From Ascidiella aspersa (taxonomy: Eukaryota): a stretch of 64,000 nt of DNA. Below are positions 1,129-57,484 of this stretch, in pieces (position 1 is the stretch's first letter; each line of letters opens with the position of its first letter). Under the pieces are notes generated by a model. That model ran no database searches. It had not been told where the DNA came from and saw only the letters and a program-made list of their open reading frames with translations. The DNA is taken from NCBI GenBank assembly GCA_963924565.1, contig OZ004612.1, positions 7,130,001-7,194,000 on the forward strand. The letters are read 5' to 3'. Position numbers and translations under genes: made by a program.

Positions 1129-1401
1129 CTTAGCTGGATACGGTATGACGACAGCTTCCACGGTTAGCATGACAGCAAAGATGGTGGCGTGGTTCGAAGC
1201 GCAGGCGACTTTTCCCTGCTCCATCCCGACCAGCGTCATTCCAGTAGCCTCAAAGTCGCCCGTACTGGTGTTGTAGAACACGCAGCGAAGTTTGGCACTT
1301 CGCAGAATTAAGGTTCCAGTCTCGTTGCCTTTGTAGCTTTTCACCGAGTAGATTGAGTTGATTATGTCAGTCATGTTGCTTGTCCGAACTTCGTAACTTA
1401 A
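1129..1401 (-). CDS. Receptor A exon encoding the GAIN C-terminus and GPS motif
   Basis: Acceptor AG at 1403-1402, donor GTAAAA after 1129; LSYEVRTSNMTDIINS...LRCVFYNTSTGDFEATGMTLVGMEQGKVACASNHATIFAVMLTVEAVVIPYPAK; matches ORF 1108..1374. Confidence 0.8.
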
Positions 1402-4400
1402 CTTAAAGGGTAAATGTTAAGTCACAACATTATTTGACAACAGCAACTTTAAAGTATAGCACGGAGTCGCACAAAAAAATAATAAAACATATCATGCAGG
1501 ACTTCGGCTTCTTTAGGAAGCATAAAGAGAAGATCGATATTCAAAGTCAAATATAGTTATTTTAAGTATAGGCCTACTGTAGTTATTTGTGTCCCAGTTG
1601 TTGATGGGAAAAACAAGATAAAAAATAATATAATGTACAAAAATAAGGCACGAACATTACAACCTTTTTTAGTGCATAAAAAAAATGAATTTTTAATTTC
1701 CCAACTATTGATCATTATGATTTTTTTAATAGTATATCATTTTCATAAGGAGTAAAGTAAATTATAGTGGAATGGCCAACAGGCAGTGCATTTAAGCGAA
1801 CGATTTAATTTAAGTGTACGTAAGTTACTGGTTTTAATTTAATTAACTTAACCTATAAGTCTTTTGGACAAAATCGCTTAACTTTACCAAACCCTTTCGG
1901 ACAAATAAATTCATTTCACATAAGCGTGTTCTTCAATAATTAATTTTTGGTACAATTTATTTAGTCTTACCGCAAAGTCTGTTAGTAATAATGCTTGATA
2001 GCTACATATTACGTTTTGTTATTCGCGAATTAAAACATCTTCCGGATCGGATAAATTTACCAATTATAATAATTTACCATTTTATTTATACTTTTGTAAA
2101 TGACATGCCCAGCCTCTACTTGCTATAAAAATTACTTAGACTGAGCCTTGACTTCATGTGTTTAGTAAATGATTTGACTTTTAGTTGTTTTTCTGCAAAT
2201 GATTTAACTTTCAATTAAAAATGACTGGTTTGCAACACAGTAAAAATTTACTTAAATAAAAAAAAATCTGCATACCGTAACATTTCCCGTCAATTTTGCG
2301 GGTGTAACTCCCAGTAGGGTTCCCATCAAAAAGTTGCCTTCAAGAGTTCCGTCTTCCTTCAAAGATTTGTTGGCAACCCATTGGTTGGTCGGTGGGGTAA
2401 AATTGATCAATTCCAGTGCCACCGCCTTTGGTGTAATAAATGACGTCAGAGCTACGTCATCGAATTGGTAAGTGGTCGAGTTTCCTGGCTCGTGCATCAG
2501 GTATTCTACTTTGGCGTCGTTTTCTGAACAAGGCTTGCCTTTGGTGTCGGTTTCTGAACAAGGCTTGTGCTTTAACAAAATGGGTTTAGTTCCTTGTGTT
2601 TAGTAAAAGAAGATAACATTTCGGCAACGTGGACACAAACCAATATACGTTTGATTTCGTTAAGTCACCGAGAACATCATTTCACATTTTCGGATTTTTT
2701 GAGGTTGGTTCTAAGCACGATTTTTTTAGAATTCAAAATACTGTAGGGCGGATAAAAAGACATGCTCATTTTTATTAAATTCGTGCTTTGCTCACTTAAA
2801 AAAGTTGAAAGGAATTGGGTCGCCAAATATTCGCTGTTAGCTACCCTTGGCATTTAGGCAGGGAGTCTAACCGGAACCGAAGTGGAACTTTATGAACCGG
2901 TTTTGGGTCAATTTTTTTCGAACCGTAACCGAACCTGTACCGTTTTTTAAACGACTTTAAGTAGCCGAAGCGGAACTGAACCAAATAATTTGAACGAACA
3001 TGAACTTTAAACGAACCCGAACCTGAGCGGTTTGCTCCAGCATGACGTCACAACTTGTATTTTAAAGACTCAAATTATGTCATGTTTAAAATTTTATAAA
3101 CAAATTTGAATATTGATTAAAAAACGTTGATTTTTTTTATTTTTTAGATATTTAAATAATGAGTTGCTGTTTTCTTAATACGTCACGTAACTTTAACTGA
3201 ATGACTTACTATTCATAGATTATTCTCTACATTTGTTGACCTACATTTTTAGATTTAACGCAATTTATATAATATCCGAACCGGAACTTTATCAACCGGT
3301 TTTGAAATAACGATGGTCGGACCGGAGCTGAACCGTAACTTTTGATTTGCTCCGAACCGAAACCGAAACTGAAACTGAACCATATTCCGAAAATATCCTT
3401 AAACCCGAACCGAACCTGAACCGGAAAAGGCAAACGGTTCGACTCCCTGTATTTAGGTCGTAGTCCCATCGAAAAGGAATGGTAGCCCATAATAAAATAT
3501 ATTTTATGCACAGGCTATGATAAACGAATTTACACTGCTGGGCATTTAGATATTGACTTAGCCAAAACAAATTGGTTTGGTGGCTTTAAGGTTAAGACTT
3601 TCTTACAAATCGTAATTTGAATCGCCCGCAACTTGATTCAGTAATTACTCATTATGCTTCAGGGTAAGTAGACCAGTTTGTGTAAAAACAAACAAATTGA
3701 TAAACTTTTTAAAGGTTCACTTTTAGTTTTCGCTTTTTAACCAATACTGATCTAACGCTGAACTTACCGAATTTAGAGCAGATGTCGTTTTGAGAATCAT
3801 CGCTTTTAATGCGATAAAATGTTGCTGTAAATAAAAAGGTTGATTTAATATGATTTAAGTTTGCTAGATTTTGTGTAGTTGGATTTTTAAAAAGCAGGAC
3901 ATAGGCCTGTACACATTAATGATGTAACAATTTGTTGCATTTATATTATGCAATACGCTAACTTATACATTAAATTCATCTTATTGTTCTGAACTTTGAT
4001 CTAAATGCTTTTCAATATACTAGAGCCGTCGTCGCAATAGATATTAAATTATTTATTCTAAACTAAAAAAATAATTCTCGAAAAACACCACCAAAGCTCC
4101 CGAGAAAAAACGAAATCGCAAATATGGAAAATCAATACCAAACATTAGCATTATATCTTGGTAGAATATCTCTCCAATTTCGCAAAATCATTTATTTTTT
4201 TTACCTAGCGGGGGCGCGCGGCAAACAATGCTTCAGGGTATAAGCGTTGATGAAATTGTTTATAAGCCTGGTGGGTTAAAAATTACACTTACCATTGAAG
4301 TAACACACATAAGAGTTTTTTTCGTCCCCGTCTATGTTGTCCCACTTAGTTGAATCTCTCATCATAATCACGCATTTTTGATCTGGATCAGACGAAGGCT

Positions 4401-6405
4401 GACATGTATTCCAACTGTCGTGATATGTAACGCTGCTTCCATCCGTCCAACGATAAGAATTTTTTTGATCTATATTTGTTTCAGAGCGTGCTCCTGCGAA
4501 GTTCAAATTTATAAGAACAAAATTTAATTTCTAATTATATACTTCGTCAAACCATTATATAACCTGTGTGTAGCAGGACAGCAAGAGCCTAGTATGACGT
4601 TGTAGTGGAAAATACAGTATGGTGGTCGTATTTTGTTTTACAATAAGGTCTTAAAACCAAGTTACCAAAGTCGAAGAGGTTCAAAATTGGTCAGGGTGAA
4701 CATTATTGTAGTTTAAATAAAAAAAAAAATTTAGTGTCGACAATGTTTTTTTTTTAATAAGTAAACGCCTACAAAAAGTACAACAGCCTTGAAGTTATTG
4801 CAGCTGTCTTAGGATGAATTGTGGTAAACCAGTCGTTTTATAATGTGGTCATAAGTGGTTCATATTGGGCACGAATGCTTTAATATGTTCTAACTGACTT
4901 CCTCATTTAATATTGAGCAATACCCGAAAAGCTAACACAAACAATGCAGCACAAAAACAAACCACTAGTTTTGTTAGAATTACCGCCTGATTTGTTAAAA
5001 AATATATTCAAAGTAAAACATTTCTAAAAAAACTGTGACTTTTAAATAAGGGTTACTCGGCTACTCGCCCATTGATATCATTACAAAATTGTGTCGCCGA
5101 CGGCACTAGTTCTCGTGATTAAATTTATTGGAAGTGGTTTTAAACCTAGGTAAGATTTTCAAAAATTTGATAAAAATTGCGGAAAAACTACGAAGAAATG
5201 GCTCATATTGATGAAATTGTAAATTATTGTTGCTATTTTCTTGTTTGTGATGTCTTGCTTATTACCAATCTACTTAAGAAAGTTGAGTTGACAAAATTTC
5301 GCTATTATACTTTAAGTTTGGTGTTTGGGTTGCCGCCTAAAATGTTAATAAACACTGTTTAAGCAAAATAAAGCCGTTTTACACCTCTTCTGTATATTGA
5401 AAATTTGTTCACCTGAGTATAGATATTTATGTGAGATCACAAACTTTCTTACCGATCCACATGTCGACACCAGGATTGTATTTTCTACCAATACAAGAAA
5501 CGAGTCCGTTTTCGTGTTCGTCTTCGATTTTAGCCAGTTGGCCTGCTTTGTTAGAGCATATAACTTTGGCTTGATTAAATATTTTTCGATTGTTTTCCTT
5601 TTTCCCGAAAATTCCATATATCTTTACGCTAGTGCCATCTAAAATAAATAGAAATATATATGTCTATATATATCAAATTCAATTATAAAAATATCTAAGT
5701 CAATTATACCTTTTGTCATTCCTACTGAGAATCTATTCTTGGAAAGCACATCCCAAAAACAAATTATGTCCATATTAAGATTCGGTATTATTTTCTTTAT
5801 TGGAGTACAAAAGTACAAAATAAAAATTATTGCTGTGCATAACATACCTGTCAGTTCCAGTTTGCTTGCGATATCCAGGTCTTTAAAGCAAGATTTATAT
5901 GCATTTCGCTGACCAGGACCATTTAAACCTACAAACATCCATTGCTTTATTCGCAACAAAGTCTGGACTCGTCTCAACAGATTTACGAGGGGTAAAATCA
6001 TTTACGGGAGCAAAAGATAAGAACTAATTCTGCTTTTCTTACAATTAGCTCTGAGAAAGCATTCCTCAATTTTATTCAGTGGTTTGTTATAACAAGGCCT
6101 TAACAATTCAAAAACCATCTTTCGCGTGCTCTTTATACTTTGCGTTTTGCGGCCGGGTTTTAGCACAGTAGAAAATATAGTTATACCATCACAATTGCAA
6201 TAAGACGTTTTACCGTTTAAAAAGTTTTCTTCACACCTTGAATCCATTTTTACCCGTTGTACAACTTACCTCTCATCCGCACTTCATCGTTCACTTCGAT
6301 GACCATTCTTTGCCTGAAAGCTGTTAGTTGGTTAGACGCCAGATGAGAAAACAAGCAAAAGACGACAAAAGAAAACTGCCGCAATCCTTTCCGAAAACCA
6401 GCCAT
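1129..6405 (-). CDS. Receptor A (partial, probably continues beyond the window start): signal peptide + C-type lectin domain + short GAIN region + divergent GPS; adhesion-GPCR-like (polycystin-like not excluded)
   Basis: Seven phase-compatible GT-AG exons: 6405-6270 (MAGFRKGLRQFSFVVFCLFSHLAS...), 5928-5848, 5638-5453 (CTLD part 1, ...QAKVICSNKAGQLAKIEDEHENGLVSC...MWIG), 4493-4293 (CTLD part 2, YRWTDGS...WNTCQPS...KCV...KWDN...YVC), 3824-3768, 2553(or 2523)-2276, 1401-1129 (CVFYNTSTGDFEATGM...VACASNHATIFAVML). 404 codons, no stop. CTLD exon sizes (186, 201 nt) equal those of gene B. No TM exon found in 1-1128. Confidence 0.78.
2859..3449. mobile_element. hAT-like MITE with internal (AACCG/GAACC)n arrays
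   Basis: TIRs CAGGGAGTCTAACCG / CGGTTCGACTCCCTG; 8-bp flanks CATTTAGG (2851-2858) and TATTTAGG (3450-3457), 7/8 identical; two blocks of aaccga repeats; no ORF of note. Confidence 0.8.
4293..5638 (-). CDS. Receptor A C-type lectin domain (two exons, 5638-5453 and 4493-4293)
   Basis: A..IC....GQLA.I, WIG split by a phase-1 intron, YRWTDGS, QPS, CV, WDN, YVC. The first exon is not in the ORF track frame and was translated by hand. Confidence 0.85.
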
Positions 6406-7675
6406 GTGTTGTACTGATAAATACTTAAACCTGAACAAAACACGTCCAAATTACTATTGGCTTCGCTTTAACAACCACATTCCAACATGCTACAACGCAA
6501 ATTGCGATGAACGCTACTTTCAAATAAAAAATATTAAGCAAACAAACGATAGAGCGTCAAAATATAAATTGTTTCACGGTAACTAAATATTTGGAGCGGT
6601 CACAGTCATGCGTCCTAATTAGTGATTGCTAATATGTGTAACACGTTTTGTTCTTGTAGAAATAACCTCATTGTGGAAGAAATAGGCTTTAAGTCTAGCA
6701 TTGTGGACTTCAATGCAAACTTTATTCTCACACAACCTATTCAATTGGTGTCATAACCATCATAATAATCCCGCTATTTGCATCTTTGGTGCTTCGTGAC
6801 CCGTGTTGCAAAATACAAAAACTATAGAGAAATCTAATGAACTGACAACGAGATGCGGTTGAGCTTAGCCAGAACGGAAATCATTTCAATCCTGTTCACT
6901 GCTAAACATAATTGCAAAAGTTTGCATTGAAATGCAAATCAATTTGTTTAGACCACTTTACGAACTGGTTAAGTTTGAGAACATCTGGTGTTAAAGATTG
7001 CGAAATTAACAATTGATCCATTGCATTGCTATGCGGGCAACACTCGTGCTATCAATGCTAACAATATTTCATCCAGAACGGCGTCTATTTTGCTGTGACG
7101 CGATGTACAATAACGTTAACTTCCGAGGAAAATCCTAGAAAAAAAAACGATTGTACCTTCTTCGTATTGTGCTGTATAGCAATAATCCAATTACACTTTG
7201 TCAGATTCTTTGTGTCCATTAATTTGTTCAAAATTTTATTTTGTGCTGTCGGACAATAAAATTTGTTTCCGACTTAGAAAGCAAATGTACACTTTTGGTC
7301 AGTTAGCACTGTGGTCAGCAAATAATATATCTCTAAACTAAAACAAACCTCTTTTGTGAAGATATAAACATGTCGATTGTCGAATGACTTTGGCAACAAT
7401 TTTACAAATGCCAATGCGACAACTTGGTATTTTCAATGTAGAGGATTTCAAATAGCGTATGCTGCTTATTTATTTTTTAGCGCATTAAATTCAAATCTAA
7501 ATTTCTGTATAATTTGTTATAGGATTTTACATTTACAGAGTCAATTAGGTATTAAACTATCTTGGGTAGCCTATGTTATTTTCCTAGATTAAATTTAATC
7601 ATGTTGAAACTTATCACGTCTAACTTATTCAAATAGATTTAAATTAACCATGCGTGTTGAACCGTTAATGACCAG

Positions 7676-7912
7676 CAGGGGGAGATTTAGGAAAGGAGAG
7701 GGGCATTAGGCATTATAAATACCAGATGCATATTTTCTATCCTTTCTTCAAATGATTTTGGCCGTTTTAAGTAATTTAATAAGAATAAAGACGCTGTGCA
7801 TGCTTTGGCATGTTGCGTCGTGTAACTAATTTGACGTCTTGTTGTTACATAACTTTATAACTTCATTCCTATAAAATGTAGGCCCCAAACAAAAATCCTA
7901 GGTCCGCCACTG
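7676..7912. mobile_element. Old degenerate MITE
   Basis: Imperfect inverted ends CAGGGGGAGATTTAGG / CCTAGGTCCGCCACTG; TSD not recognisable. Confidence 0.45.
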
Positions 7913-8773: not shown

Positions 8774-21872
<13,099 letters not shown>

Positions 21873-44500: not shown

Positions 44501-44661
44501 TAAAAATGCAGATTTATTCTCACGAACATAGAATACGGCTAATAGTATAATCATTTATCATGACTAATTGCAACAGAATCACCTGTATTTGCAGTACTTC
44601 CATTGATAGCCGACGTTAGACAGAACAGAGCAAATAAAACAGCTTTGTAACTAAACATCAT
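32568..44661 (-). CDS. Adhesion GPCR B: signal peptide - CTLD - long mucin stalk - GAIN/GPS - 7TM (ADGRG-like TM region), about 1135 aa
   Basis: 18 phase-compatible exons: 44661-44583 (MMFSYKAVLFALFCLTSAING), 43880-43818, 43135-42950, 42498-42298, 42099-41098, 40922(or 40940)-40907, 40508-40439, 40205-40071, 39419-39237, 38600-38382, 37778-37650, 36581-36444 (GPS CVSWNYSTQSWSSQGC...CKCDHMTNFALLV), 36222-36113 (TM1), 35827-35620 (TM2-3), 35043-34935 (TM4), 34844-34681 (CWI, TM5), 34042-33872 (TM6-7), 32792-32568 (stop). 3408 nt, no internal stop. Confidence 0.88.
33542..33851. mobile_element. hAT-like MITE, family 1 (CAGGGGTTCTTAAAC TIR)
   Basis: Ends CAGGGGTTTTTAACA / AGTTTAAGAACCTCT; 3' part GGACCCC...GGTCCATGGACCCCAGTTTAAGAACC shared with copies at 45999 and 62303. 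Confidence 0.7.
36444..36581 (-). CDS. aGPCR B GPS exon (predicted HM|T autoproteolysis site and tethered-agonist start TNFALLV)
   Basis: Canonical four-Cys, two-Trp GPS pattern. Confidence 0.93.
36789..36870 (-). mobile_element. tRNA-derived SINE-like copy (degenerate)
   Basis: Aligns by eye with 38879-38960 (AGAAAAACAACTA...GAGGTT.AA...GGGACCGTCGC...AACT.AGCTA..CAG). Confidence 0.55.
38879..38960 (-). mobile_element. tRNA-derived SINE-like element or tRNA pseudogene
   Basis: Minus strand TGTAGCTCAGTTAGTAGAGCGACGGTCCC...GAGTTTGAACCTC shows Pol III A-box and B-box-like motifs followed by a T-rich tract; no proper anticodon arm. Confidence 0.62.
41098..42099 (-). CDS. aGPCR B mucin-like Thr/Pro stalk exon (1002 nt)
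   Basis: Phase 1-1 exon inside ORF 41051..42148; PKPTSTTT repeats. Confidence 0.9.
41349..41730. repeat. Coding 24-nt tandem repeat (PKPTSTTT) containing a 135-nt higher-order duplication
   Basis: GGTTTAGGAGTTGTTGTAGAAGTT units; the 45-aa block PKPSTTTTTRTIT-PKPTSTTT-LKPTSTTT-PKPTSTTT-PKPTSTTT occurs twice. Confidence 0.9.
42298..43135 (-). CDS. aGPCR B C-type lectin domain (exons 43135-42950 and 42498-42298)
   Basis: NFADAGWAC...GQLAVV...WIGL...YRWLDGS...WANGKPS...VCV...WNNQRC...FAC. Confidence 0.9.
44012..44365. repeat. Old GACTT-repeat-rich dispersed element
   Basis: Clusters of GACTT/GACTTGACTT; similar tracts at about 2135-2240 and, inverted (AAGTC), at about 50777-50993. Confidence 0.5.
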
Positions 44662-46420: not shown

Positions 46421-49400
46421 TTAGGCCGGAGTCAAGAGTGTCCCACTTTTTATGTCGGATGTTCCTTTTCCCGTCTCTTGGGGAGTGCCGGAGGTTGCTG
46501 TTCTTTCGCCGATCGCCTTTCTCCGGTTTGCACAACATATGACGTCACGAATAGGTGGCCACCACGTCAGTTTGACGTCACCTCGACGGACACAGGTCAG
46601 CACGAATATGCACAAACCCTAGGTTGAAAAAACAAAGTTAAAAACTTTAATTCTAACTTACATCCCTTTTACACTGTGTATATCTATAGATTTGTTCACA
46701 TTCATTAAGCACCGTATCAATTAGTTTACAGTGCCCTAAGAACATACACTGATCTGTTGGAAAATATTTCACTTCCAAAAGCACAATGGGACTCAATTGT
46801 CGTTTCGATATTAGCAATCCAGTTCAACTTCAGTAAACTTTTGAAAAATCTCAAGGAATAGTATGTTGTGTTCGTGCAAGTAGTCAATAACAGTTAGCAG
46901 TAGGCCTATAGAGCCGAAATGGTTAAAGTGTGATGGTGTTTTGAATAGCGAGGTTTCAGTTTTGTCCTAACTAGAGAATTAAGCTTATCATAGCGTTACC
47001 ACGTTGTGTTTTTGTCGTTTCTCAAATGTGTTCGCGTCAATTACTCAAACCTTTTGTACAAAACAAAAGTTGTCCGCCAGTTGTGTACACAATTGCTCCC
47101 AAGAATATGCAACTCAGTCAGCAGAGCGACGGACCCAAAATGGTCGAGACCCTGAGTTCGAATCTTAACGCAAGATCTCTTTTTTAAGATCCCTTACTTG
47201 CATATAAATCGTATATGCCAAACTGATTTCGACTCTAACCCTACTTTACGATGCGGTATTATTTTGTATTACAATCAGAATACTTCCCAAAATATGTTCG
47301 ACGACCAGTCACGTAATCGGTATACCGAAGTAAAAGGATGTCCATTTATGAAAATCAAAGAGCAAGCGTAATCTAATATGGTTACCTGCGTGCCAGCCAG
47401 TATAGCGAAAATCCAACTCATTGCTCTGAGATAAGTTGGATCTTTCGAAAGCATCATCAAATATGCGAATATCCACACCAGACCAAGGGTGCTTGCAATG
47501 GTAGCCGCAATGGCCAAGTGATCTCTATTTCGAGGCCTTTTCGTTGTAGAACGAACCTGACAAAACAAACCGGCTCAATACCCTTTCCCATATTTTAGTT
47601 AGCATTGGAACACCAAATTCAACGATTGGTTGGTTAAGGAAGTTTTCGCCAATGACATTTTCACATGATATAATCGATTGTATGTCGGTCTCTCGTCACT
47701 TAATCTAAAACAAGTCATTGAAAAATTGGGACTTAAGTCAAGTAATAGGACACATATTGATATGACAAACCTATGCTTGAAAAAAAAATGAAATACCCAT
47801 TCACAGGGGTACGGTATAAACAAAATCTAACATTGCACTTGAATTTTGTAAAGCAAACATGTTTTTCAGTGGCTTTAGAAATAATTATTTGCCGTAATCA
47901 TTCCGAGTTAACCCATAGTAATTGATTTAAACCTAAAACTGTGTGACCGAAAATAAACCAGTAGGGTTTAATTACATTTGTAATTACTTTAAAAAATTAA
48001 ATTTGGTTCAGCTAAATGTGACAGAAACATTTTATTTTGGTTCTCTACATAGCTTATACGATACGGGAAAATATCCACAAAAAACAGGGATGTAACAGGC
48101 ATAGATCTTTATCATCACAAAAAACTCGTAAAAAAAAAGCTTAGCGAAGCCGAGAGTTTGTTGTATATCCATATACAGAGATAGATAAATCTTACCTTCT
48201 CCGACTTGGATAGCAAACTTCTGAAAACCAGGCCAAACATGACTATGTTAAAAAGAAGCATCAGCCCAATTGGAAGCAAGAAGCCAACGTAGAGGTAATT
48301 TCCTTCGATCCAGCACATGTTGGAAGCCAAAAGATTACGAGGAAAAGGAACAAAAGGATCTTTAAAGACAAAGGATACTTTCTATGGACTTTGTGATAAT
48401 ACACACACTCATTAGTTATCTTCAGGGAGTTCTGATAATATCAGATTGGAGCTGATGGGAGATGCCATATGGTATAATATTGGTATATTGGTGCTATCGT
48501 TGCCGTTTTGATAGAAAATTGTGATTTTCAGCCATGATTAGCGATTCCACCTTGAAAGGTTAATTTATCAAAACACAACTTGTTATCAACTAAATGTAAC
48601 TAAAGTCTAGCGCCAAAACAAGTTTTAGCATAATAAACTTTTTGACGTTTTGATTTCCTCTAGTGTTATTTTTGGGGTATACTTCTGACATATTTAACTA
48701 AACCACGTGTATAGAGCTGGTTGTTTTTTGAACTTTCAAATTAAAGGACTTATGTGCTGTATACAGTTGACTGGTGCTTGTGGTATTTTTACAATAAGAT
48801 ATTGAAACGATTGTTCAGTGCTAACCAAAATCATACGCTGATTAGATTGTAAAGCAGACAGAAACCAATTTTAACCTAGTCTATATAGTGCGTAAGTACA
48901 CGCCGTGATAAACTAGGACTGCAACTCTAACTTACAAATGTAAAGAATGTGGAAAGTGTTTTAGCCGGACGTCAAATCTTAATCTACACAAAAAACTCAC
49001 TCTCATGAAGAAACACTTTAAATCAAATCTTGTGATTATACCTTGTATCGATATCGGAATGAATCTATTGGACATCCCTATTCACGGTGTCCTCTACCTA
49101 CCTTCTAACCCTTTGGCCACTCCAAGCGTTAAGACCACCACTAAAGCTGGACATCCGTACGAGAATAAGTAGGCCAGACGCAGATACATGCTTCCAAACA
49201 CGTTAAATACCTGTTGATTAAAACAAGTTCGATTGGGTTAACTTTTTTCTCTTTTTCTAAAGAACGATTAGTTTGAGCAATCGCAAAACACAGCAACGAT
49301 TCAAAAGTAGGTGGAAACTTATGAACAAAATTACCTTGACACGAAATTGGTGATATTTTAAACAACAATGAAAGAAAAGTTAGTATCGAACCAAATTCAG

Positions 49401-52400
49401 AGAGTTTCTCTTGTTACAAAATATGGGAAACAGATACTTTTTCTGATGGGATTTTTAATTACAATAAAGTTATTCCAGTTTTCTTCCGCGCTAAAAAACA
49501 CCAGCTTTATTAGAAACTTAAAATGTACGGATGACGCAGTATTGTCAATTAAAAAGCATGTTTAGGTTTACTTACCTGAACTATGGACCGAAAGAGAAAG
49601 TAGATGTATACCGCCATCCAGCACCAGGTGACCAGAAGAAAGTACTGCAGCAAGGTGGCGCCAAAGACGCACGCGATCGCTTGTGTTCGATGCTCGACCC
49701 CACAAAGAAAAACGATGTACGAAGCGGCGAGATTTAAACAAATGTTTATCAGGACTTTCATTGGTCCACGATGCCGGATACTTCTGCAAACCAAACGGAC
49801 GGTTTCTATTTTAAAAATTGTTTTAAATTCGCATTTTAATGACTTTTTTTTCTGCGCTTTATCAATCTTACAAAGACAAAGAACTTTCAAGACACATCAT
49901 TTTAAAAAAGTGTTCGACTCGTGTACAGAAATATCATATGAATAGATATATATATATTCATATTATTATCAGTTATATAAATCATATTGATAAAAAAACA
50001 AACTACATGGTGTTCTGAAGGTTACTTATTTATGACGTCACATTAAGCTGTAACTTTGTGACGTCACAGTTAAAAAACATTTCATGGCCTCCAACCAAAA
50101 AATCCTCTATCAGCGCCTTCCTGTGAGTTAGTATTTCAAGTTAACCTCTTGTAGATGGTTAAAGTTTGAGCGCCCACCCGCATTTATAACATCGCAGGTT
50201 TTTTGTTTCCTTACCGCGACTTTAGAAGAATGATTACGTTCAGCAGAAGACAGAAGACCGATAGAGAGCACAGAACAACGCTTGCTTTATCCAGTGCAAT
50301 GTCCGGTGCCACTTCGTACACCATCTGCAAGAAAAATACTAATGTTGGATGTTTGAAAAATAATCTTAAAGTGTGTTGTATAACCTAAGCATTTCGCCGA
50401 AGTTCACAGGTTTTTGCCTAAAGCGTAACTCGGTTACAAAGTCACCTTACTCGTAAAGGCACATGTGGTACATGAGGAAAATGCTAAATGAAATTATACG
50501 GATTAAACGTCATGCTAGTTATTTTTTCATATTAAACTGAAATGTATATTTGACAATTTGAAAGCGAATGGCGTAGTATTTAATTAAAATGGCGCAGCGT
50601 TCAATTAAGACCATTACATGGCCAATATCAAGTTAAAATTGCGCATTTAAATTCTTGGCTTGGGTAAAACTAAATCACTTACTCAAATAGAATATAATCC
50701 TTGACATTATTAAAAATCGTTTCTTATTACCACGCATATTTTAAACAGAGAAATGCTTTTTGGAAACGAGATAATCAGTGTTTGTTTGTAAAGACTCAAT
50801 CAAGTCATTTGCAAAATAACTATGGGTGCCAAGTCAAGTGTAAAAAAAGTCCAAAGTCAAGTCTAAGCTAAATCAGGAATAACTCAACAAGAAAATAACA
50901 GAAACCAAACAAAGAACGAAATATCTTAGTGACTGAGGTCCAAGGCAAGTTATTTATAAAGACTTCAGTCAAAAAGTCGTTTTACCGAAACTAAATACGT
51001 CACGACAAGTTATTTGATAAGAGCGACTTAAGCGCACTTTAATCAATTTAAGTAATTTACGTGTGTCAGGACAACAAAGGACATGGTCGACTTCGTAGAA
51101 CGTAATGCCTGCTAATTATTAAGTCTTACCATTAGCATGGCAAAGTTCGTCATATGGTTACATTTGCAGACAGGAGGGTTGGAATTTTCCACCAAGTGGC
51201 AGCCTTGTCCTGACCAAGACCCAGTGCTGTAGTTCCAAGCTACGCAAGTCTGGTTCACGTAAACAGCCTGAAAAAAATTTGGTTTGTGGAACACGCACTT
51301 TTAAAAAGTAATGTTTACCAAACCCATTGCCTGTATATTCTACTGTATTTTTCAGGGCGCTACAAGTTAAACAGAAAATAAAGTAAGTCATCATGGTCAC
51401 GGTATGAATACGCCCTTTGGGGTCTATGTGTCCCTTTTTTGCAGGATTTATTACTTACATTTTCAGGGGGGAATTCGGTCAATATATGTTTTTACATCTA
51501 AACATCAAGTTAGTTTAAGGCTATACATACATAACAAATTAAAATAAAAATTGACGCACAATTATACGAAAAAGTAATATGTTATTGCTATTAAACTATG
51601 GCAATCCTACTTTCAAAGTTGAGTCGTTTTGTTTCTTTCCAGCGCTTGTATTAATGTAGGAGTGAACAACCGTTACAGGTGTCTTCAGGTTGCTGACATG
51701 TTTGATGCCTGATTTCTTTCCAACGCTTGCTGAGACAACCTACACGAATTGAGGATGTGGTTTACCGGTTCAATAACATCATGTTAATTGAAAACTTTGA
51801 AATCGTTTACTTTGGTAGAGTTTTTTTACTAAAAAGTAAAATAATATATATATATATATATATATATAATTATCACGTATCTGTACTAAGTAAAAGGTCT
51901 CGCAATTTCGACCTGTCGGTAAAAACTTAATACCAAAGAAAATCATCCGATGAATAAATGTTAAAGCTAGACTGCTTTTTAAATCCTAAAAGACTTGCCG
52001 TTCATGAAAAGCATTAGACGCAAAGAAGTGCTTGTGAAACTTACAAATTCCATTGCAGTCTTTTTTTGAGATCGAAACATGGTTGTATTTTGATACAGGA
52101 CAAACACAGTTCTAGCAAGGCACTGGCCAGTGATGCCGTTTTGACAATTAGCGCCTTCTACTTGCTTAAGTGCTTCCAGGGGAACTACAACTGTGACTGG
52201 GTTAGGTTGCATTGTGTGGTTGATAAGTGGCCTGTAGACCAAGCTTGAGTTTGGGCTCATTTCATCCTTGATCTATCAATGTAAATGTACCACAAAAATG
52301 ATCTTTAAACTGCATTATACACTGTGGAGTTTTGATAGGTAAATGGTATATTGTCGTAACCCTTATAACTTATGTAACATCAATTAACAAATCAATAACA

Positions 52401-55400
52401 TGTAATTTAAATTTATTTACTAGACAAGCACACATGGGAAATTGTGTATAGGCATTACAGGAAATGATGTTCGTTATTTTGTAACTGATTGAGATATCCA
52501 GAAAAGAGAAATCCAGAAAACTCTGAAGCACCTGTATTTGAATGTCCCCAGAACTTGTAGCGTATTGACTGTTTTGTAGTATAACCTTATAAGCTAACTC
52601 TTCTAAATTTCTTGTGAGCATTTCTTTAGTATCAAACGTGGCCTCAGTTGTACCATTATTTACCATATTTGCCAAAGAGACGATTTCCTGGTAGAAGAAG
52701 GGGGATATCTGAAGAAAATAGAAAAGTGTCAATGTGAGAAAGCCTTGGTTTGTGTTACTAGAGCTTTTAAGTTTATATTATATGGTAATCCGTTGTTTTG
52801 ATTTCTTATTTTACCTCATTAGCTATTTGGTTCACATTCTGAACGAATCTTGCAATCCTAGAAAAACTTTGAGCCGATGATTGGTTTGCTCTCATAGCTT
52901 TTAATAGCAAACTCATACATTTGTCCAAAGGTGGTATGCTGGGTGGATGCGTCTATAAAACCAAAGGCATATTACAATCTCATTATATTCCCGATTTTAT
53001 TGTAAAACGAAACGTTACAGTGAGCTCATTAGCATAGTTGTTGTGTATACTTTTAACTGATAGTAATAGGTGAGTTTATGAGACATGTGTCCACGTACAA
53101 ATGCCACTAAACGACAGCAAAAAGTTATGCACAAATACCTTGGTGAAAGAACAGTTTGTTGTGTTATCTACAGTTTTCGAAGAATCTGAAAGAACAACGT
53201 AAAGTGATGAAACAATGTAAAACAAAAACGATATTTATAAATAAAAATCTGATCGTTCATACCTGTATTTGGGGAAAGTTGAGTTGGCGTAACTTTTGTT
53301 TTTGTTGTTGTTGATATTGTAGTTGTACGAGATACAGTTACTCTATTCGTTGTAGATCTTGCAGGTACTATGCTTGTAGTTGTAGCTACTGTTGATGTAG
53401 CTGTCGATGTTTCTGGAGTTTTTGTCGTTGTCGTTAAAGCTGTAGTGCTTGTTTCCGACACTGTTGTTTTTGTTGGTGGTGGTGGTCGATTGTGGTAAGT
53501 GTACCGCACTTAAAATCAGAAAAAACAACGGAAACACTATAGTGGCAATGTATGAGGTAAACAATAGCAGTAGCACGTTGGATTGAATATCTTGAAATGG
53601 CTGCCACAATTTACTTGCAAGAAACAAGTTCTGCGCAGATAGCAAGGCCATTTAATTACGACAAAAATATAATACGCTTCATAAATAGTATGCTTTAAAA
53701 GTATCATATTTACTCCAAATCGCTTACTAGAAAAAGTGCCTTTATCCACAGAGGATCCAGTAAATATTGTAGCCAGGCACTAAACATTATTTTCTGGAGT
53801 TCTATTAGATTATTTTAAGAATGTTTATAAAAACAGATATGCAACATAAAATTGTTTCTTACAATTTAACAGAAATATATATTTCACGTAAAGGGCATCG
53901 TCAGTTTCTTTTCAATAGAATCTTTTGCATTGATTTTGCTTTGTTATTCCTACATTTTACATACTTTTTAGAGAGCACACGAAATACTGGATCTTGAAAC
54001 AAAGCGAGTTGTGCCATTTCAGGCCGTGCTGAATTAACTTTCCGACGCAAGTATGCTGCGGCAGATTGTTGGGTTCGACCATTTTTGCCGTTTTAATCCA
54101 GTTGGTGTACGAAGGAGTTGAACCATCTTCCCATCGATAAGACGTGTTGTCACCCGGTTTGCCAAACGTCCGCAATCCTACAAAAAAAACAGTGCAATTT
54201 ACAATAAATCATACACAAACTTATATATATATATATATTCATCAACTTTAATTTAGCTCTTAAGTTCATTGTAAGATTATATGGTACTGTAAATCCCCTT
54301 CAATGCGAAATTTCAAGCATTTGCGTATGGTTGTTTCTCTATTCGCTTCTCTCTGAGGCTGTGTAGCTTAGTTGTAAGAGCAGGGGTCGGCAACCTACGG
54401 CCCGCGGGCCGGATGAAATTCATCCGGCCCGCCGCCTCTTTGATAAATTAGGCACGATTCCATTTTAAATACTTTTTAACAATTTTAACTACGTAAGCGC
54501 GAATGATCCTTCTCCATTCGGTTTGTTTACGTTTTGACATTGTCTTTTGAAATATAGATTAGCGCTTCTTAACCGTTGCGCCGTGGAAGGCTGCCAAGTG
54601 CATTGCGGACAAACGGAAAACGTATTTCCAAATATTGGATATATATTTTTTAGCACTTTTTTATTGTCGGCAATGTACGCTAATGAAAACTTGCAAGAAA
54701 TGGCGTTATACTAAAATAAAATCTCGCTCGCTTCGCTCGCCAGGTGTGCCCGGCTTTAAAAGGTTGACAAACACTCAACTAGATTAACTAATGTTATTGC
54801 GTTTCCTCAAAGTAGTTTTATTACACTTTTCATTAGTAGTATGGATGACGATTTGTGGACTCGGATTTTAAACCAAACAAACGCATTTTATTCGCGCTTG
54901 GCGCCAACACTTTATTACTGCCTCCTTAAATGTAATTAAACACGTTTTTAGGCGCAAAAAGGTTCCTTAACTAAAGGTGTATTAAAGGCGGGCTCTGATT
55001 TAAAGTTTTTTATTGGTGAATGGTAAATAACTTAAAATATACAATCTGACCACTTGGTATCAAAAAATCGATCATTGATTTTATAAATGCATTTTTAACC
55101 ATTCCGTCAGTCTTTTATTGTTCTACTGTAACGTGATTTACATGTCACCATTAGTTTTTTTTTTTTTATAATAGGTGAAGATTGGAATGCAGTGTATTAG
55201 GACGAATATTGCCAAGAAAACAATTCGCGTCTTATCCTTGCAACGGAGTCAAGGACCAATTTGAAATTCAAACTCAATTTCGTTTGCCCACCTATCCAAA
55301 ATGCAGTGTATTCATAATCCAGATACAACGCCGTGTTTCTTATAGCGCAGTTAAGATGACTTTCATCGTGGGCCGATCGGGTGATGGCTAGGGTCCCACC

Positions 55401-57484
55401 CAAATCATTGCATGCCATTTTTGAAGCACTGTAGTTGGCTGTTCCTTGAACCATGTAGAACGATAGATCTGAAATAGAAGATCCGACGTTAAAATCGATC
55501 TACTTGTACTTACAATATATTTTTTATGTTAAACTGATAGATATTTTTCATGTAAACCTTTTGATTGTTATATTGGCATCGCTATTTCTGTACAAAATAG
55601 GTCCCCGTGTAACAAAATTGGGCATTAAACGTTTGAGTCAAACCTTACAAAATAGAAAATTGCGATGTTGCAAGTAATTCGACGCCGTGGCGTAAACAAA
55701 AAAAATAACTGCAAAGCCGTGCCTCCTTTTGCATCATCGTAAACAATGGTTTAGAACCGTGGTGGCCATTTTAGATTATTTTAATCTAGATTTAGATGTT
55801 TTGGTTTGAATCTAGATGTAGGATTATACAATCAAGATGTTAGATGTTTTTTTAGATTATTATAAAAAATATTGTATAATCTAAATTAGTGACAGATTCG
55901 CTATTGACGATAAATATTTCAGTAATTTCAAAAGTTTTTTTTTTTGCAAATTGAAAAAAAAAATGATGAGATATAAAATCGAAATTTCAGTAACTCGTCA
56001 TGTTCAGTAAAATGTTTTATAAAGCAGAAGTCTTAAATCTAAACCATCAAGCAAGTCCCTTTATGCAACTTTATACGGCATTAAGCTTTTAATGTTGATT
56101 TTTTGTCCAAAAGTATTGAATATTTTTCAAAAATCATTTTTAGATTATTTTTTAGATTTCTTCATAAAAATCTAGATGCTTTTAGATTATTTTTTTTGGT
56201 AAATCTAGATGATTACTGTGAGAAAAAAATGGCAACTATGTTTAGAACAGGGTTTGCCAAACTGTGGTCCGCGACGACTGCACAGGTGGTCAGTGGCGAT
56301 ATGACAAGAAGTTAAAAAGTCACACAATACGTTGTGCAGTACGTATACCCTTTCAAAGATAATTGCCTTAGTTATTTACAACCTAATAATTTGAAAGCTT
56401 TTGCTATCCAGTATCGTAAATCTTACTTGTTGGGCCTTCGTTGAAGTCAAAAAGTTGTTTACGAAAAATTCTCGTATTCCTCGTCTATGACGTAATAATA
56501 TATGCTTATCGCCATTCGAAAAATACAGGTGTAACACAAATAGCGAATTGATTATTTATGCAGAAAGAAGCAATCGCATCCGTCCCATTGATGCTGTCAG
56601 TTTTTTTGTAGTATTTTTTTGCTTTGTACTGCGGCCCGCGAAATATCAGATTCATAAATAGTGGTCCGTGGTCCGAAAAAGATTGGAAAACCCTAGTTTA
56701 GAAGAATGTTTTTGTGGATCCTTAGGGTTAAGATTTCACATCTTGCCAAAATAACTATTTAGCGAAAGTTTTGAGGCTTTTCTGTTTCTTCTCCGTTTTC
56801 CACGCTACAACATTAATAGGTTCTTAATGTTAAGTCATTACCTTCGCTTTGCTTTGTGAAGTGACTGCAGTTTTGGACAATTTTCCACTGTGTCTCATTG
56901 AGCATCGTACCTTGACAAAAAACAGTACGTTTGTTGTTTGTTTTAATATACGTAGAAATAATCCACAAATGTCGTACATTTGCTTTAGAATGCTTAATTC
57001 TAAATTCCATCGTTCTGAAAGCGTCAGTTAGCAAAAACCTATCTACTTTACATTTAAGTTTGAACTAAAACGATGTTTTTAAATGAAATTTTTAATTTTA
57101 TATTATTTTGTGTTTCAAACAAATTTTTTTCGGGGGGAGGCGTTTAGTTTTAATGGCATGCTTCAAAATTCGATAGCTCAATTTCCGTACTTGTTCAACA
57201 AAGAATAGACAAGTACAGTAATTTAGAAAATTACAGACATTGCAAACAGTAAATCGAATATCATACTTTTTTAACAAAATGTTAATGTGAAACTGAGTAT
57301 TACGTTGAAATTGCTTACGCTAAAACTTGCAATCACTATAGAGACTACCTGTATGGTATATACTTCCATTCCAGAATTTGTCGACAGCAAACGATTCAGG
57401 GTAGCAAGTCGGCAAGGTCAACGCCAAGGTCAGCAACAACTTTACTCCGAAAGTCATCATAGCCGCCGCCGCAACCGATAGCAT
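46421..57484 (-). CDS. Adhesion GPCR C: signal peptide - CTLD - short mucin stalk - GAIN/GPS - 7TM, about 856 aa; tandem paralog of B
   Basis: 16 phase-compatible exons: 57484-57349 (MLSVAAAAMMTFGVKLLLTLALTLPTC...), 55468-55292, 54177-53965, 53508-53263, 53167-53139, 52952-52815, 52708-52532, 52272-52045, 51739-51611, 51267-51130 (GPS ...CKCNHMTNFAMLM), 50324-50215, 49783-49576, 49210-49102, 48359-48196, 47556-47386, 46618-46421. 2571 nt. Exon sizes 129/138/110/208/109/164/171 are identical to gene B. Confidence 0.9.
47108..47185 (+). mobile_element. tRNA-derived SINE-like copy
   Basis: GCAACTCAGTCAGCAGAGCGACGGACCC...GAGTTCGAATC...TTTTTT; same AGAGCGACGG.CCC core as 38879-38960, with a good B box. 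Confidence 0.58.
48933..49045 (+). pseudogene. Decayed C2H2 zinc-finger fragment in an intron of aGPCR C (opposite strand)
   Basis: TACAAATGTAAAGAATGTGGAAAGTGTTTTAGCCGGACGTCAAATCTTAATCTACAC = YKCKECGKCFSRTSNLNLHKK; a frameshift in the A-run precedes the second His, and a corrupted second finger follows. Confidence 0.65.
51130..51267 (-). CDS. aGPCR C GPS exon
   Basis: AVYVNQTCVAWNYSTGSWSGQGCHLVENSNPPVCKCNHMTNFAMLM. Confidence 0.93.
53965..55468 (-). CDS. aGPCR C C-type lectin domain (exons 55468-55292 and 54177-53965), EPN type
   Basis: NYSASKMACNDLGGTLAI...FWIGL...YRWEDGS...NW...EPNN...TCV...WHNSLC...FVC. Confidence 0.9.
54381..54435. mobile_element. 5' terminus of a hAT/Charlie-type non-autonomous element
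   Basis: CAGGGGTCGGCAACCTACGGCCCGCGGGCCGGATG...CATCCGGCCCGC; matching right end not identified. Confidence 0.5.
55758..56240. mobile_element. TIR element (8-bp TSD) inserted at the left edge of the adjacent hAT MITE
   Basis: Imperfect TIR CGTGGTGGCCATTTT / AAAATGGCAACTATG; flanking direct repeat TTTAGAAC (55750-55757, 56241-56248); subterminal TTAGATTATT and ATCTAGAT arrays near both ends. Confidence 0.72.
56248..56695. mobile_element. hAT-like MITE, family 2
   Basis: Ends CAGGGTTTGCCAA / TTGGAAAACCCTA; 8-bp TSD GTTTAGAA; terminal regions closely match 61053-61453. Confidence 0.85.

What the first reader, a model, noticed from the sequence alone, without database searches (positions are those of the whole stretch)
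1129..57484. Cluster of C-type-lectin-tipped adhesion GPCR-like receptors: a candidate glycan-sensing receptor family
Seen: three co-oriented genes each carry one N-terminal CTLD encoded by two exons split at the same phase-1 position in WIG (186+201 nt in A and B, 177+213 in C), followed by a GAIN/GPS region; B and C have complete 7TM regions. Established: GAIN/GPS + 7TM defines adhesion GPCRs, and a lone CTLD on a mucin stalk is the layout of pattern-recognition lectins rather than of the mammalian aGPCRs I know. Inference: a lineage-specific expansion that couples carbohydrate or microbial recognition to G-protein signalling (immune, settlement or gamete sensing).
Basis: partly seen in the sequence, partly recalled or inferred. 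Interest (0 to 1): 0.75.

Follow-up and report, generated by a model that had tools for sequence, protein, structure and literature searches.

The report
Sea-squirt lectin-headed adhesion GPCR genes
Three neighbouring genes in a sea-squirt-like genome each encode a cell-surface receptor with a lectin-type tip on an adhesion-GPCR body; the layout is real but already annotated in other sea squirts, and nothing in the sequence shows that the tips bind sugars.

Summary
Three minus-strand genes (A 6405-1129, B 44661-32568, C 57484-46421) each carry one C-type lectin-like domain (CTLD). B and C have all seven TM segments in the window. A's 7TM lies just outside it.

- These are adhesion GPCRs of a tunicate-type genome with at least 146 GPS hits.
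- The CTLD+GPS+7tm_2 layout is already annotated in Ciona, Clavelina and a chiton, and was listed for amphioxus in 2008.
- None of the three CTLDs keeps the canonical sugar-site residues (EPN/QPD, E, WND).
- Only B and C have a mucin stalk.
- One RNA run gave about three reads on exons and no splice joints.

New here:
- A is the last copy of a 10-copy tandem array.
- B and C are an old pair under purifying selection (dN/dS about 0.13).
- Their signalling half groups with EGF/CUB-headed tunicate receptors. Their CTLD shares a rare intron position and an extra cysteine with A. This suggests head shuffling, but AU tests do not prove it.

The scan has noted such arrays before on other DNA of this genome. 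Exons were searched one by one; no joined model was used.

The parts
57349..57484 (-). Gene C exon 1: ATG at 57484, hydrophobic signal-like start, phase-1 donor (57349; 57364 is an alternative)
   Evidence: predicted only
55292..55468 (-). Gene C CTLD exon 1 (177 nt), ends W-I-G|gt in phase 1
53965..54177 (-). Gene C CTLD exon 2 (213 nt); EPN..H..WHN at the sugar-site positions
53263..53508 (-). Gene C Thr-rich mucin-like exon (81 aa, 40% Thr), phase 1-1
52815..52897 (-). Gene C candidate short exon between mucin and G1 (unresolved; 53185-53085 is the alternative)
   Evidence: weakest part of the model
52532..52708 (-). Gene C pre-GPS exon G1 (donor 52532 chosen by match with B; 52421 is an alternative)
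52045..52272 (-). Gene C pre-GPS exon G2
51611..51739 (-). Gene C pre-GPS exon G3 (129 nt, 76% identical to B)
51130..51267 (-). Gene C GPS exon: four Cys, two Trp, C-N-H-M|T-N-F-A-M-L-M
   Evidence: (GPS 54.1 bits)
50215..50324 (-). Gene C TM1 exon (110 nt; acceptor corrected from 50384 after alignment to Clavelina relatives)
49576..49783 (-). Gene C TM2-TM3 exon (208 nt)
   Evidence: (7tm_2)
49102..49210 (-). Gene C TM4 exon (109 nt)
48196..48359 (-). Gene C TM5 exon (164 nt)
   Evidence: (7tm_2)
47386..47556 (-). Gene C TM6 and first half of TM7 (171 nt); L-G-L-V-W motif in TM6
46421..46618 (-). Gene C last coding exon: end of TM7, cytoplasmic tail, stop
44583..44661 (-). Gene B exon 1: ATG at 44661, signal-like hydrophobic start, phase-1 donor
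   Evidence: predicted only
42950..43135 (-). Gene B CTLD exon 1 (186 nt), ends W-I-G|gt in phase 1
42298..42498 (-). Gene B CTLD exon 2 (201 nt); KPS..E..WNN at the sugar-site positions
41098..42099 (-). Gene B mucin exon (1002 nt, 333 aa, 55% Thr, 17% Pro), internal 135-nt and 24-nt repeats, phase 1-1
40071..40237 (-). Gene B pre-GPS exon G0 (weak acceptor)
39237..39419 (-). Gene B pre-GPS exon G1
38382..38600 (-). Gene B pre-GPS exon G2; aligns 50-130 residues before the GPS of Clavelina P0008
37650..37778 (-). Gene B pre-GPS exon G3 (129 nt)
36444..36581 (-). Gene B GPS exon: C-D-H-M|T-N-F-A-L-L-V
   Evidence: GPS 52.4 bits; aligned to solved ADGRG3, ADGRF1, ADGRL3
36113..36222 (-). Gene B TM1 exon (110 nt)
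35620..35827 (-). Gene B TM2-TM3 exon (208 nt)
   Evidence: (7tm_2 29.4 bits)
34935..35043 (-). Gene B TM4 exon (109 nt)
34681..34844 (-). Gene B TM5 exon (164 nt)
33872..34042 (-). Gene B TM6 and first half of TM7 (171 nt)
32568..32792 (-). Gene B last coding exon with stop
6270..6405 (-). Gene A candidate first exon (ATG 6405; uncertain)
5453..5638 (-). Gene A CTLD exon 1 (186 nt), ends W-I-G|gt in phase 1
4293..4493 (-). Gene A CTLD exon 2 (201 nt); QPS..Q..WDN; lacks the Cys after the WND position
2276..2592 (-). Gene A middle exon (no Pfam match; weak acceptor)
1129..1401 (-). Gene A GPS exon: degenerate (two Cys, no Trp), S-N-H-A|T-I-F-A-V-M-L. The 7TM exons continue outside the window, at 3539-929 of locus L002 (the 4 kb that end one base before the window's first base)
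   Evidence: GPS 29.1 bits; 7tm_2 on L002 exons

Best explanation
The window holds three real adhesion-GPCR genes of a tunicate-type genome. Each has a single CTLD as its outermost domain.

B and C are old tandem duplicates. Each reads signal peptide, CTLD, Thr/Pro mucin stalk, pre-GPS (GAIN-like) region, GPS with an intact H-M|T cleavage triad and a TNFA(L/M)L tethered agonist, then a class-B2 seven-helix bundle.

Inferred mechanism, by analogy with studied adhesion GPCRs and not shown here: the GAIN domain cuts itself, and the CTLD on its stiff glycosylated stalk holds an external partner. Pulling on the N-terminal fragment, or rearranging it, lets the tethered agonist activate the 7TM and a G protein. 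The partner is unknown. On the sequence it is at least as likely to be a protein or a non-canonical ligand as a sugar.

A is a different receptor type. It has the same kind of CTLD cassette, no mucin stalk, a degenerate GPS (H-A|T) and a divergent, intron-poor 7TM. It is the last unit of a 10-copy tandem array that runs leftwards out of the window.

The CTLD cassette is two exons flanked by phase-1 introns, so the pair can be inserted or removed without changing the reading frame. It appears to have been shared between these unrelated backbones by exon shuffling.
For: - Domains per exon: Lectin_C, GPS and 7tm_2.
- Gene models: exact GT-AG, phase-consistent, stop-free 15-exon chains for B (3291 nt) and C (2487 nt). 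Seven of their exons have identical lengths in the two genes: 129, 138, 110, 208, 109, 164 and 171 nt.
- Helix count: seven hydrophobic segments in each.
- GPS: B's exon aligns to solved ADGRG3, ADGRF1 and ADGRL3 across C-x-C-x-H-L/M-T-x-F-A.
- Relatives: GPS and TM exons are colinear with Clavelina adhesion GPCRs P0003 and P0008 at 38-69% identity.
- Selection: B against C over 251 ungapped codons gives pN 0.15, pS 0.63, dN/dS about 0.13.
- Head versus body: B and C are 25-41% identical in the head and 64-80% in the GPS and TM2-TM7 exons.
- The layout recurs independently: P0068 (Ciona), P0151 (Clavelina) and P0154 (chiton) carry Lectin_C+GPS+7tm_2.
- A's array: 10 copies of the 7TM exon at 93-100% identity, 2 of them interrupted by a stop, and 10 matching GPS hits about 12.5 kb apart.
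- Shuffling hints: the four nearest in-genome relatives of the B/C body all have EGF-type exons upstream and none a CTLD. Two single-exon trees put B+C inside the EGF/CUB-headed tunicate clade. A, B, C and one neighbouring-cluster CTLD share the WIG phase-1 intron, which 5 of 6 other CTLD loci lack. A, B and C share an extra Cys in exon 1 that P0068, P0151 and P0154 lack.
Against: - No RNA proof. In the one RNA run laid (about 6% of it read), depth on C's GPS, mucin and CTLD2 exons came to only a few reads in all (my estimate from the depth table). Most of the 129 laid reads fell on an intronic repeat, and no joint was seen.
- CTLD first exons score below Pfam's cut-off on their own.
- No Pfam GAIN model matched any pre-GPS exon, and the fold could not be tested without joining exons.
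- C's G0 exon and the G1 donors are uncertain.
- The shuffling reading is not statistically secured. AU tests do not reject B, C, P0068 and P0151 as one clade (p 0.197; p 0.232). In the TM6-7 tree the Ciona/Clavelina CTLD receptors are sister to the whole EGF-headed clade.
- Only 10 kb upstream of each paralog's GPS was searched for heads.
- A's TM1 exon was not located, and its middle exon has a weak acceptor.
Confidence: 0.75

Rival explanations
1. These are pattern-recognition-type lectin receptors whose CTLD binds carbohydrate (microbial, gamete or settlement glycans) in the Ca-dependent way and passes this on to G proteins.
For: - CTLD as the outermost domain on a mucin stalk in B and C.
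- C keeps an E-P-N triplet in one alignment.
- In polycystin-1, a CTLD in a GPS-cleaved N-terminal fragment is reported to act through a glycan on PC-2 (PMC7728438, passages read).
- Large tandem expansion.
Against: - None of the three has the full EPN/QPD + E + WND set. A reads QPS/Q/WDN and lacks one canonical Cys. B reads KPS/E/WNN, and its best solved match is a mannose-receptor CTLD (residues 269-319) with SPS and WEN at those positions. C reads H and WHN at three positions, and HMMER places its EPN off the canonical column.
- In the one DNA sample laid, C's two CTLD exons show no variant while its mucin exon shows eight.
- There are no expression data under any challenge.
Confidence: 0.15
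2. Gene-model artefact. The CTLD (and mucin) exons form a separate secreted-lectin gene lying upstream of a headless GAIN-7TM gene, and are not spliced to it.
For: - No RNA joint was seen.
- Read-through past C's CTLD exon 2 donor meets a stop within two codons, so a short secreted form is possible.
- The exon after the mucin exon is the weakest in both models.
Against: - The same order, orientation and phase-compatible chain is found at three loci here.
- It is also found in the array copies, where CTLD and 7TM hits alternate at matching spacing.
- Annotated single proteins of Ciona, Clavelina and a chiton have the same order.
- The GAIN-7TM part has no signal-peptide exon of its own between the mucin and GPS exons in the frames read.
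Confidence: 0.07
3. The copies are unexpressed or decaying duplicates of an over-expanded family.
For: - Near-zero RNA depth in the single run.
- 2 of 10 A-type array copies carry a stop in the 7TM exon.
- A's GPS is degenerate.
Against: - All 30 predicted exons of B and C are open with intact splice sites.
- dN/dS between B and C is about 0.13, with synonymous sites near saturation.
- One RNA sample, of which about 6% was read, cannot show silence.
Confidence: 0.05

Closest known systems
Ciona intestinalis 'adhesion G-protein coupled receptor G6-like isoform X2' (P0068, 798 aa) and Clavelina lepadiformis 'G6-like isoform X1' (P0151, 824 aa)
   Same: One N-terminal Lectin_C domain, then GPS and 7tm_2, in tunicates. 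Their sugar-site residues are also non-canonical: PPD or EPN, with WDD.
   Different: - Only 29-40% identical to B and C in the few exons that align.
- No Thr/Pro stalk after the CTLD in the stretches printed.
- They lack the extra Cys shared by A, B and C.
- They fall outside the B/C clade in both exon trees, though the AU tests are not decisive.
- These are automatic annotations. I found no functional study.
Tunicate EGF/CUB-headed adhesion GPCRs (Clavelina CAK8690816 = P0003 and CAK8690964 = P0008; Styela clava XP_039253275 = P0011)
   Same: Closest GPS and 7TM sequences to B and C: 38-69% per exon, colinear. TM2-3 matches in the in-genome relatives span the whole exon query.
   Different: Their heads are CUB and/or EGF repeats, not a CTLD plus mucin stalk.
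Amphioxus Adhesion GPCRs with 'Lectin C-type' N-termini (Nordstrom et al. 2008, PMC2246102)
   Same: The CTLD-on-adhesion-GPCR layout was listed in a genome inventory (passages read).
   Different: Different lineage. There is no sequence comparison here and no functional work. The paper called the domain unique to amphioxus among GPCRs.
[quoted passage not shown]
   Same: Lectin_C + GAIN + GPS + 7tm_2.
   Different: It is a mollusc protein. It has a near-canonical EPN..E..ND site, and its GPS is only 38-46% identical.
Polycystin-1 and PKD1L3
   Same: A CTLD in an N-terminal fragment released by GPS autoproteolysis. A functional role for that CTLD is reported (PMC7728438, passages read).
   Different: They have an 11-TM polycystin body, not 7tm_2. 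No PLAT or PKD-channel match was seen in any exon scanned here.
Latrophilins (ADGRL) and Drosophila CIRL
   Same: A lectin-type domain (rhamnose-binding lectin) at the tip of an adhesion GPCR (passage in PMC6900090).
   Different: A different lectin fold (not a CTLD) and a different 7TM subfamily.

Membership tests
Adhesion GPCR (class B2) | Seven-helix domain of the secretin/adhesion type (Pfam 7tm_2) | tested here: met
   B and C: 7tm_2 on the TM2-3 and TM5 exons, seven hydrophobic segments, colinear with the 7tm_2 regions of P0003 and P0008. A: 7tm_2 on two exons just outside the window; its TM1 exon was not located.
Adhesion GPCR (class B2) | GPS motif directly before TM1 | tested here: met
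   Pfam GPS 54.1 (C), 52.4 (B) and 29.1 (A) bits against a cut-off of 22.5. After the acceptor correction the GPS-to-TM1 spacing matches Clavelina relatives.
Adhesion GPCR (class B2) | Autoproteolysis triad H-(L/M)-(T/S) and hydrophobic tethered-agonist core T-x-F-A-x-L | tested here: met
   B reads H-M-T-N-F-A-L-L and C reads H-M-T-N-F-A-M-L, aligned to H-L-T in solved receptors. A deviates: H-A-T-I-F-A-V-M, with only two of four Cys and no Trp. That the triad and agonist core are defining is my recollection of the field. Cleavage itself was not tested.
Adhesion GPCR (class B2) | GAIN fold (helical subdomain A plus beta subdomain B) upstream of the GPS | tested here: inconclusive
   No Pfam GAIN model matched a single exon. 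Exons G2 and G3 align to the pre-GPS region of tunicate adhesion GPCRs. A fold test needs the joined exons, and that step was left out.
C-type lectin-like domain (CTLD) | Match to Lectin_C with the WIG(L) motif and the core cysteines | tested here: met
   - Second exons score 24.3-28.0 bits, over the cut-off.
- First exons score 14-21 bits, under it when scanned alone.
- Second exons match solved CTLDs at E values down to 7e-11.
- A lacks the Cys after the WND position.
Ca-dependent carbohydrate-binding C-type lectin (sensu stricto) | EPN or QPD triplet, a downstream Glu, and WND at the Ca-2 sugar site (motif recalled; columns fixed by alignment to solved CTLDs) | tested here: not met
   A reads QPS/Q/WDN. 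B reads KPS/E/WNN. C reads EPN (placement ambiguous)/H/WHN.
Mucin-stalked receptor | Long Ser/Thr/Pro-rich segment between the tip domain and the membrane-proximal part | tested here: met
   B: 333 aa, 55% Thr, 17% Pro, tandem repeats. C: 81 aa, 40% Thr. Not met for A: no 25-residue window with at least 50% S+T+P.
Polycystin-1 family | PLAT domain and polycystin-type 11-TM channel-like body after the GPS | tested here: not met
   The exons after the GPS match 7tm_2. No PLAT or PKD_channel match appeared in any frame scanned.

The most novel reading that the evidence does not exclude
The two-exon, phase 1-1 CTLD cassette (WIG-split, with an extra cysteine) is a mobile sensor module. Within about 0.5 Mb of one chromosome it has been moved between unrelated adhesion-GPCR bodies: the A-type array, the cluster about 450 kb before the window's start (near 6.68 Mb on the same contig), and the EGF-clade body of B and C. 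Inside the A array it has diversified while the signalling half is kept uniform. Together these would give the animal a combinatorial, germline-encoded set of recognition receptors for self/non-self, microbes or settlement cues, wired to G proteins.
Probability: 0.12. Interest if true: 0.6.

Novelty: new member of a known kind. Interest (0 to 1): 0.3.

Why it matters
Tunicates are the closest living relatives of vertebrates (my recollection). They lack antibody-type immunity (also recalled) and settle permanently on surfaces, so large families of surface receptors are natural candidates for recognition tasks.

This window adds two well-preserved, old CTLD-mucin-GAIN-7TM genes and ties a third to a 10-copy array. 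It also gives a concrete example in which the sensor head and the signalling body of adhesion GPCRs seem to have separate histories.

That is useful for annotating this genome and for choosing receptors to test. B and C have textbook cleavage and tethered-agonist motifs, so they are easy to assay. It does not open a new class of receptor, and the sugar-sensing idea currently has no sequence support.

Tried and rejected
- RNA support. The run search found 2 holders of unrecorded type with genome-like even depth, plus one RNA run of the same species label. Laying that RNA run and one of the holders on 50150-56149 gave almost no exon depth and no joints.
- First exon boundaries for TM1 (50384 and 36357) implied an oddly long gap between the tethered agonist and TM1. 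Alignment to Clavelina relatives showed that the in-frame upstream part is the polypyrimidine tract. The acceptors were moved to 50324 and 36222. B's TM5 acceptor was likewise moved to 34844.
- The G1 donor could not be fixed by phase alone. I chose the pair of donors that fall at the same aligned residue in B and C. The alternative is listed in parts.
- C's G0 exon: two candidates, neither convincing.
- A phylogenetic test of independent origin of the CTLD heads came out inconclusive. Two exon trees favour it; two AU tests (p 0.197 and 0.232) do not reject a single clade. A's TM2-3 exon sits on a very long branch and could not be placed.
- A's GPS exon found nothing among solved structures at E up to 0.1. 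A's 7TM exons gave only weak matches to the proteins in hand.
- Rfam and tRNA scans of the window found nothing.
- Open frames of at least 75 aa in the spacers showed no evident coding sequence by eye. They were not scanned against Pfam.
- Literature. Four searches found no functional study of a CTLD-headed adhesion GPCR and no description of one in tunicates. The 2008 Ciona GPCR inventory reports mostly GPS-only N-termini (PMC2396169, passages read). The choanoflagellate GPCR paper has no 'lectin' in its text (PMC12716839). Supplementary files, which hold the domain tables of these inventories, were not opened and may list more such receptors.


Full report
WHAT IS THERE

The window has no N and is AT-rich, with eukaryote-style short exons. 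It is bases 7,130,001-7,194,000 of contig 6 of a 308.6 Mb assembly in 75 contigs. All genes of interest are on the minus strand.

Stop-to-stop frames scanned one by one against Pfam gave the following.
- Gene C (57.5-46.4 kb): Lectin_C on two frames, GPS at 54.1 bits, 7tm_2 on two frames.
- Gene B (44.7-32.6 kb): the same set, with GPS at 52.4 bits.
- Gene A (6.4-1.1 kb): Lectin_C on two frames and GPS at 29.1 bits.

Between A and B lies an unrelated Ser/Thr kinase gene (Pkinase, E 3e-22). Its nearest solved relatives are SIK3, MARK and SNRK.

CHECK OF THE OBSERVATION

- A: 186 + 201 nt.
- B: 186 + 201 nt.
- C: 177 + 213 nt.

Each first exon ends W-I-G|gt with the Gly codon split after its first base.

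I built full exon chains for B and C. I used B-versus-C protein matches per frame, GT-AG sites and phase, and later a correction from relatives.
- Both chains are stop-free and phase-consistent over 15 exons: B 3291 nt, C 2487 nt.
- Seven exons have identical lengths in the two genes.
- Seven hydrophobic segments are present in each.

So 'B and C have complete 7TM regions' holds.

The shared WIG split is more than chance and more than a family habit. Of six other CTLD loci of this genome that I read, five keep the (Y/F)IGL motif inside the second exon. Only one shares the split, and it belongs to the adhesion-GPCR cluster about 450 kb before the window's start on the same contig.

One thing does not hold for all three genes: the mucin stalk.
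- B has a 333-residue exon (55% Thr, 17% Pro) with 135-nt and 24-nt repeats.
- C has an 81-residue one (40% Thr).
- A has no Ser/Thr/Pro-rich frame between its CTLD and GPS exons.

WHOSE GENES ARE THEY

One exon (TM2-TM3 of B, 69 aa) was scored against 1.84 billion representative proteins. It found 256 hits at E up to 0.001, none above 56% identity.

Of the ten best long hits:
- seven are tunicate proteins (four Clavelina lepadiformis, two Styela clava, one Ciona intestinalis);
- one is a turtle fragment;
- two are unnamed.

So the organism is a tunicate whose own proteins are not in that library. My hits agree at that level and no further.

IS THE LAYOUT KNOWN

Yes.
- Of 20 long hits scanned with Pfam, one (P0068) has Lectin_C + GPS + 7tm_2.
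- A word search with P0068 returned 52 proteins. Three carry that triple: P0068 itself ('adhesion G-protein coupled receptor G6-like isoform X2', Ciona intestinalis), a Clavelina protein of the same name, and a chiton protein named L3-like.
- The 2008 amphioxus GPCR inventory lists 'Lectin C-type' among new N-terminal domains of Adhesion GPCRs (PMC2246102, passages).
- The 2008 Ciona inventory did not see such heads (PMC2396169, passages).

I found no functional study in four literature searches. The supplements of these inventories were not opened.

The scan itself has flagged several lectin-headed adhesion-GPCR arrays elsewhere in this genome.

HOW B AND C LOOK AS RECEPTORS

- The GPS exon has the four Cys, the two Trp and C-x-C-(D/N)-H-M|T-N-F-A-(L/M)-L. 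It aligns residue for residue with solved ADGRG3, ADGRF1 and ADGRL3.
- After the acceptor correction, the tethered-agonist stretch runs straight into TM1 with the spacing of the Clavelina relatives.
- TM6 keeps L-G-L-V-W. TM7 keeps Q-G followed by I-F-F (exon translations). The comparison with the usual adhesion-GPCR motifs is my recollection.
- Over 251 ungapped codons in five exons, B and C differ at 15% of non-synonymous and 63% of synonymous sites, so dN/dS is about 0.13. The pair is old and has been kept under purifying selection.
- Their heads are far more diverged (25-41% identity) than the G3, GPS and TM2-TM7 exons (64-80%).
- They are each other's closest relatives in the genome. The next TM2-3 matches are only 50-51% identical.

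GENE A IS ANOTHER KIND

- Only its second CTLD exon and its GPS are detectably similar to B or C (30-40%).
- Its GPS is degenerate: two Cys, no Trp, H-A|T.
- Its 7TM lies in the 4 kb before the window. There, TM3 to TM6 sit in one 174-residue exon, unlike the one-or-two-helix exons of B and C.
- That exon occurs 10 times at 93-100% identity, about 12.5 kb apart, over the 130 kb to the left. Two copies are interrupted by a stop. An eleventh copy is 80% identical.
- The array's second CTLD exon comes in at least two types: four copies at 97-100% and three at 63-67%. The heads vary while the bodies stay uniform.

SUGAR BINDING

Aligning the second CTLD exons to solved CTLDs (CD23, mannose receptor, PLA2 receptor, type II antifreeze) fixes the columns of the Ca-2 sugar site. 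A MAFFT alignment with the Ciona, Clavelina and chiton domains agrees.

| Gene | EPN/QPD position | Glu position | WND position | Other |
|---|---|---|---|---|
| A | QPS | Q | WDN | lacks one canonical Cys |
| B | KPS | E | WNN | |
| C | EPN in MAFFT; HMMER puts it off the canonical column | H | WHN | |

No copy has the full set, so 'glycan-sensing' is not supported by sequence. It is not excluded either, since non-canonical CTLDs can bind sugars or other ligands.

In the one DNA sample laid, C's CTLD exons carry no variant and the mucin exon carries eight. This is one sample only, and it may be the assembly's own.

HEAD AND BODY HISTORIES

The GPS/7TM half of B and C is closest to tunicate receptors with CUB and EGF heads.
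- The four nearest in-genome relatives all have EGF-type exons within 10 kb upstream of their GPS, and none has a CTLD hit.
- A tree of the TM2-3 exon puts B+C (99/99) inside a nine-row group with those EGF-headed genes (92/91), within an 18-row tunicate group (94/96). The Ciona/Clavelina CTLD receptors (100/99) lie elsewhere.
- The TM6-7 exon tree again nests B+C among EGF/CUB-headed rows, with the Ciona/Clavelina pair as sister to that whole group.
- AU tests do not reject one clade of B, C, P0068 and P0151 (p 0.197 and 0.232). Single exons have little power, and I did not concatenate them.

On the head side:
- A, B and C share the WIG phase-1 intron;
- they share an extra Cys in exon 1 that the Ciona, Clavelina and chiton domains lack;
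- the signal, CTLD and mucin exons are all bounded by phase-1 introns, the arrangement that allows in-frame shuffling.

My reading is that one CTLD cassette has been placed on at least two unrelated adhesion-GPCR bodies in this chromosomal region. I hold this at roughly 60%.

EXPRESSION

The run search listed three runs: two holders of the stretch whose type is not on record, from one study, and one RNA run of the same species label. The holder that was laid showed even, genome-like depth.

About 6% of the RNA run was read.
- 129 reads were laid, mostly on a high-copy repeat in C's first CTLD intron.
- Mean depth was 0.4-0.9 over the bins holding the GPS, mucin and CTLD2 exons. All these reads had the first mate on the plus strand, which fits a minus-strand RNA in a usual stranded library.
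- Depth of 1.4 in the opposite direction fell in the bin of the intron beside CTLD exon 2.
- No joints were seen.

This neither confirms nor refutes splicing of the CTLD exons to the GAIN/7TM exons.

LIMITS

As a result:
- no whole-protein Pfam scan, homology search or structure prediction of A, B or C was made;
- the GAIN fold is inferred from the GPS match and from colinear similarity of exons G2 and G3 to the pre-GPS region of tunicate receptors.

VERDICT

This is a real, correctly described cluster. It is a lineage-specific set of CTLD-headed adhesion GPCRs of a kind already annotated, though not studied. Its ligand class is unproven, and there is a plausible but unproven history of head shuffling.

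Noticed in passing
the 130 kb of contig 6 just before the window's start (array runs from about 128 kb before it up to gene A); locus L002 holds the last 4 kb: Gene A is the last unit of a tandem array. There are 10 copies of its 174-residue 7TM exon at 93-100% identity, about 12.5 kb apart; 2 of them are interrupted by a TAA. An 11th copy is 80% identical. The second CTLD exon falls into at least two types: 4 copies at 97-100% and 3 at 63-67%.
   Followed up: partly
window 8777-20715, minus strand: A multi-exon Ser/Thr kinase gene sits between A and B. It has Pkinase exons at 20.7, 19.0 and 11.7 kb and a 484-residue, GC-rich (50%), low-complexity last open frame at 8777-10228. Its nearest solved kinases are SIK3, MARK2/3 and SNRK.
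   Followed up: partly
window 54350-55150 and 55750-56149 (introns of gene C): A very high-copy repeat. Summed contig depth in the holder run laid is 10^4-10^5, against about 90 for the flanks, and most RNA reads land here. It contains a 30-base near-perfect palindrome at 54403-54433.
   Followed up: partly
window 53251-53421 (mucin exon of C): Eight single-base variants within about 170 bases on one alternative contig of the holder run laid. The two CTLD exons of C show none. Possibly two haplotypes of a fast-changing stalk.
   Followed up: no
window 41142-42086, plus strand: A 314-residue Val/Gly-rich open frame lies antisense to B's mucin exon. It is a by-product of the Thr-codon repeats, not a gene.
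   Followed up: yes
whole genome G000: At least 146 GPS-motif matches over the Pfam cut-off in 308.6 Mb, many in tandem runs on contigs 1, 2, 3, 6, 7 and 8. This is a very large adhesion-GPCR (or GPS-protein) complement.
   Followed up: no
window 53750-53949: RNA depth of 1.4 (about two reads, by my estimate) in the orientation opposite to gene C, in the bin of the intron next to CTLD exon 2. Unexplained; may be antisense or repeat-derived.
   Followed up: no
L002 929-2116, minus strand (just outside the window): Gene A's last exon continues into a roughly 340-residue tail of repeated K-M-A-H-E-S-(K/R)-like units with no Pfam match.
   Followed up: no
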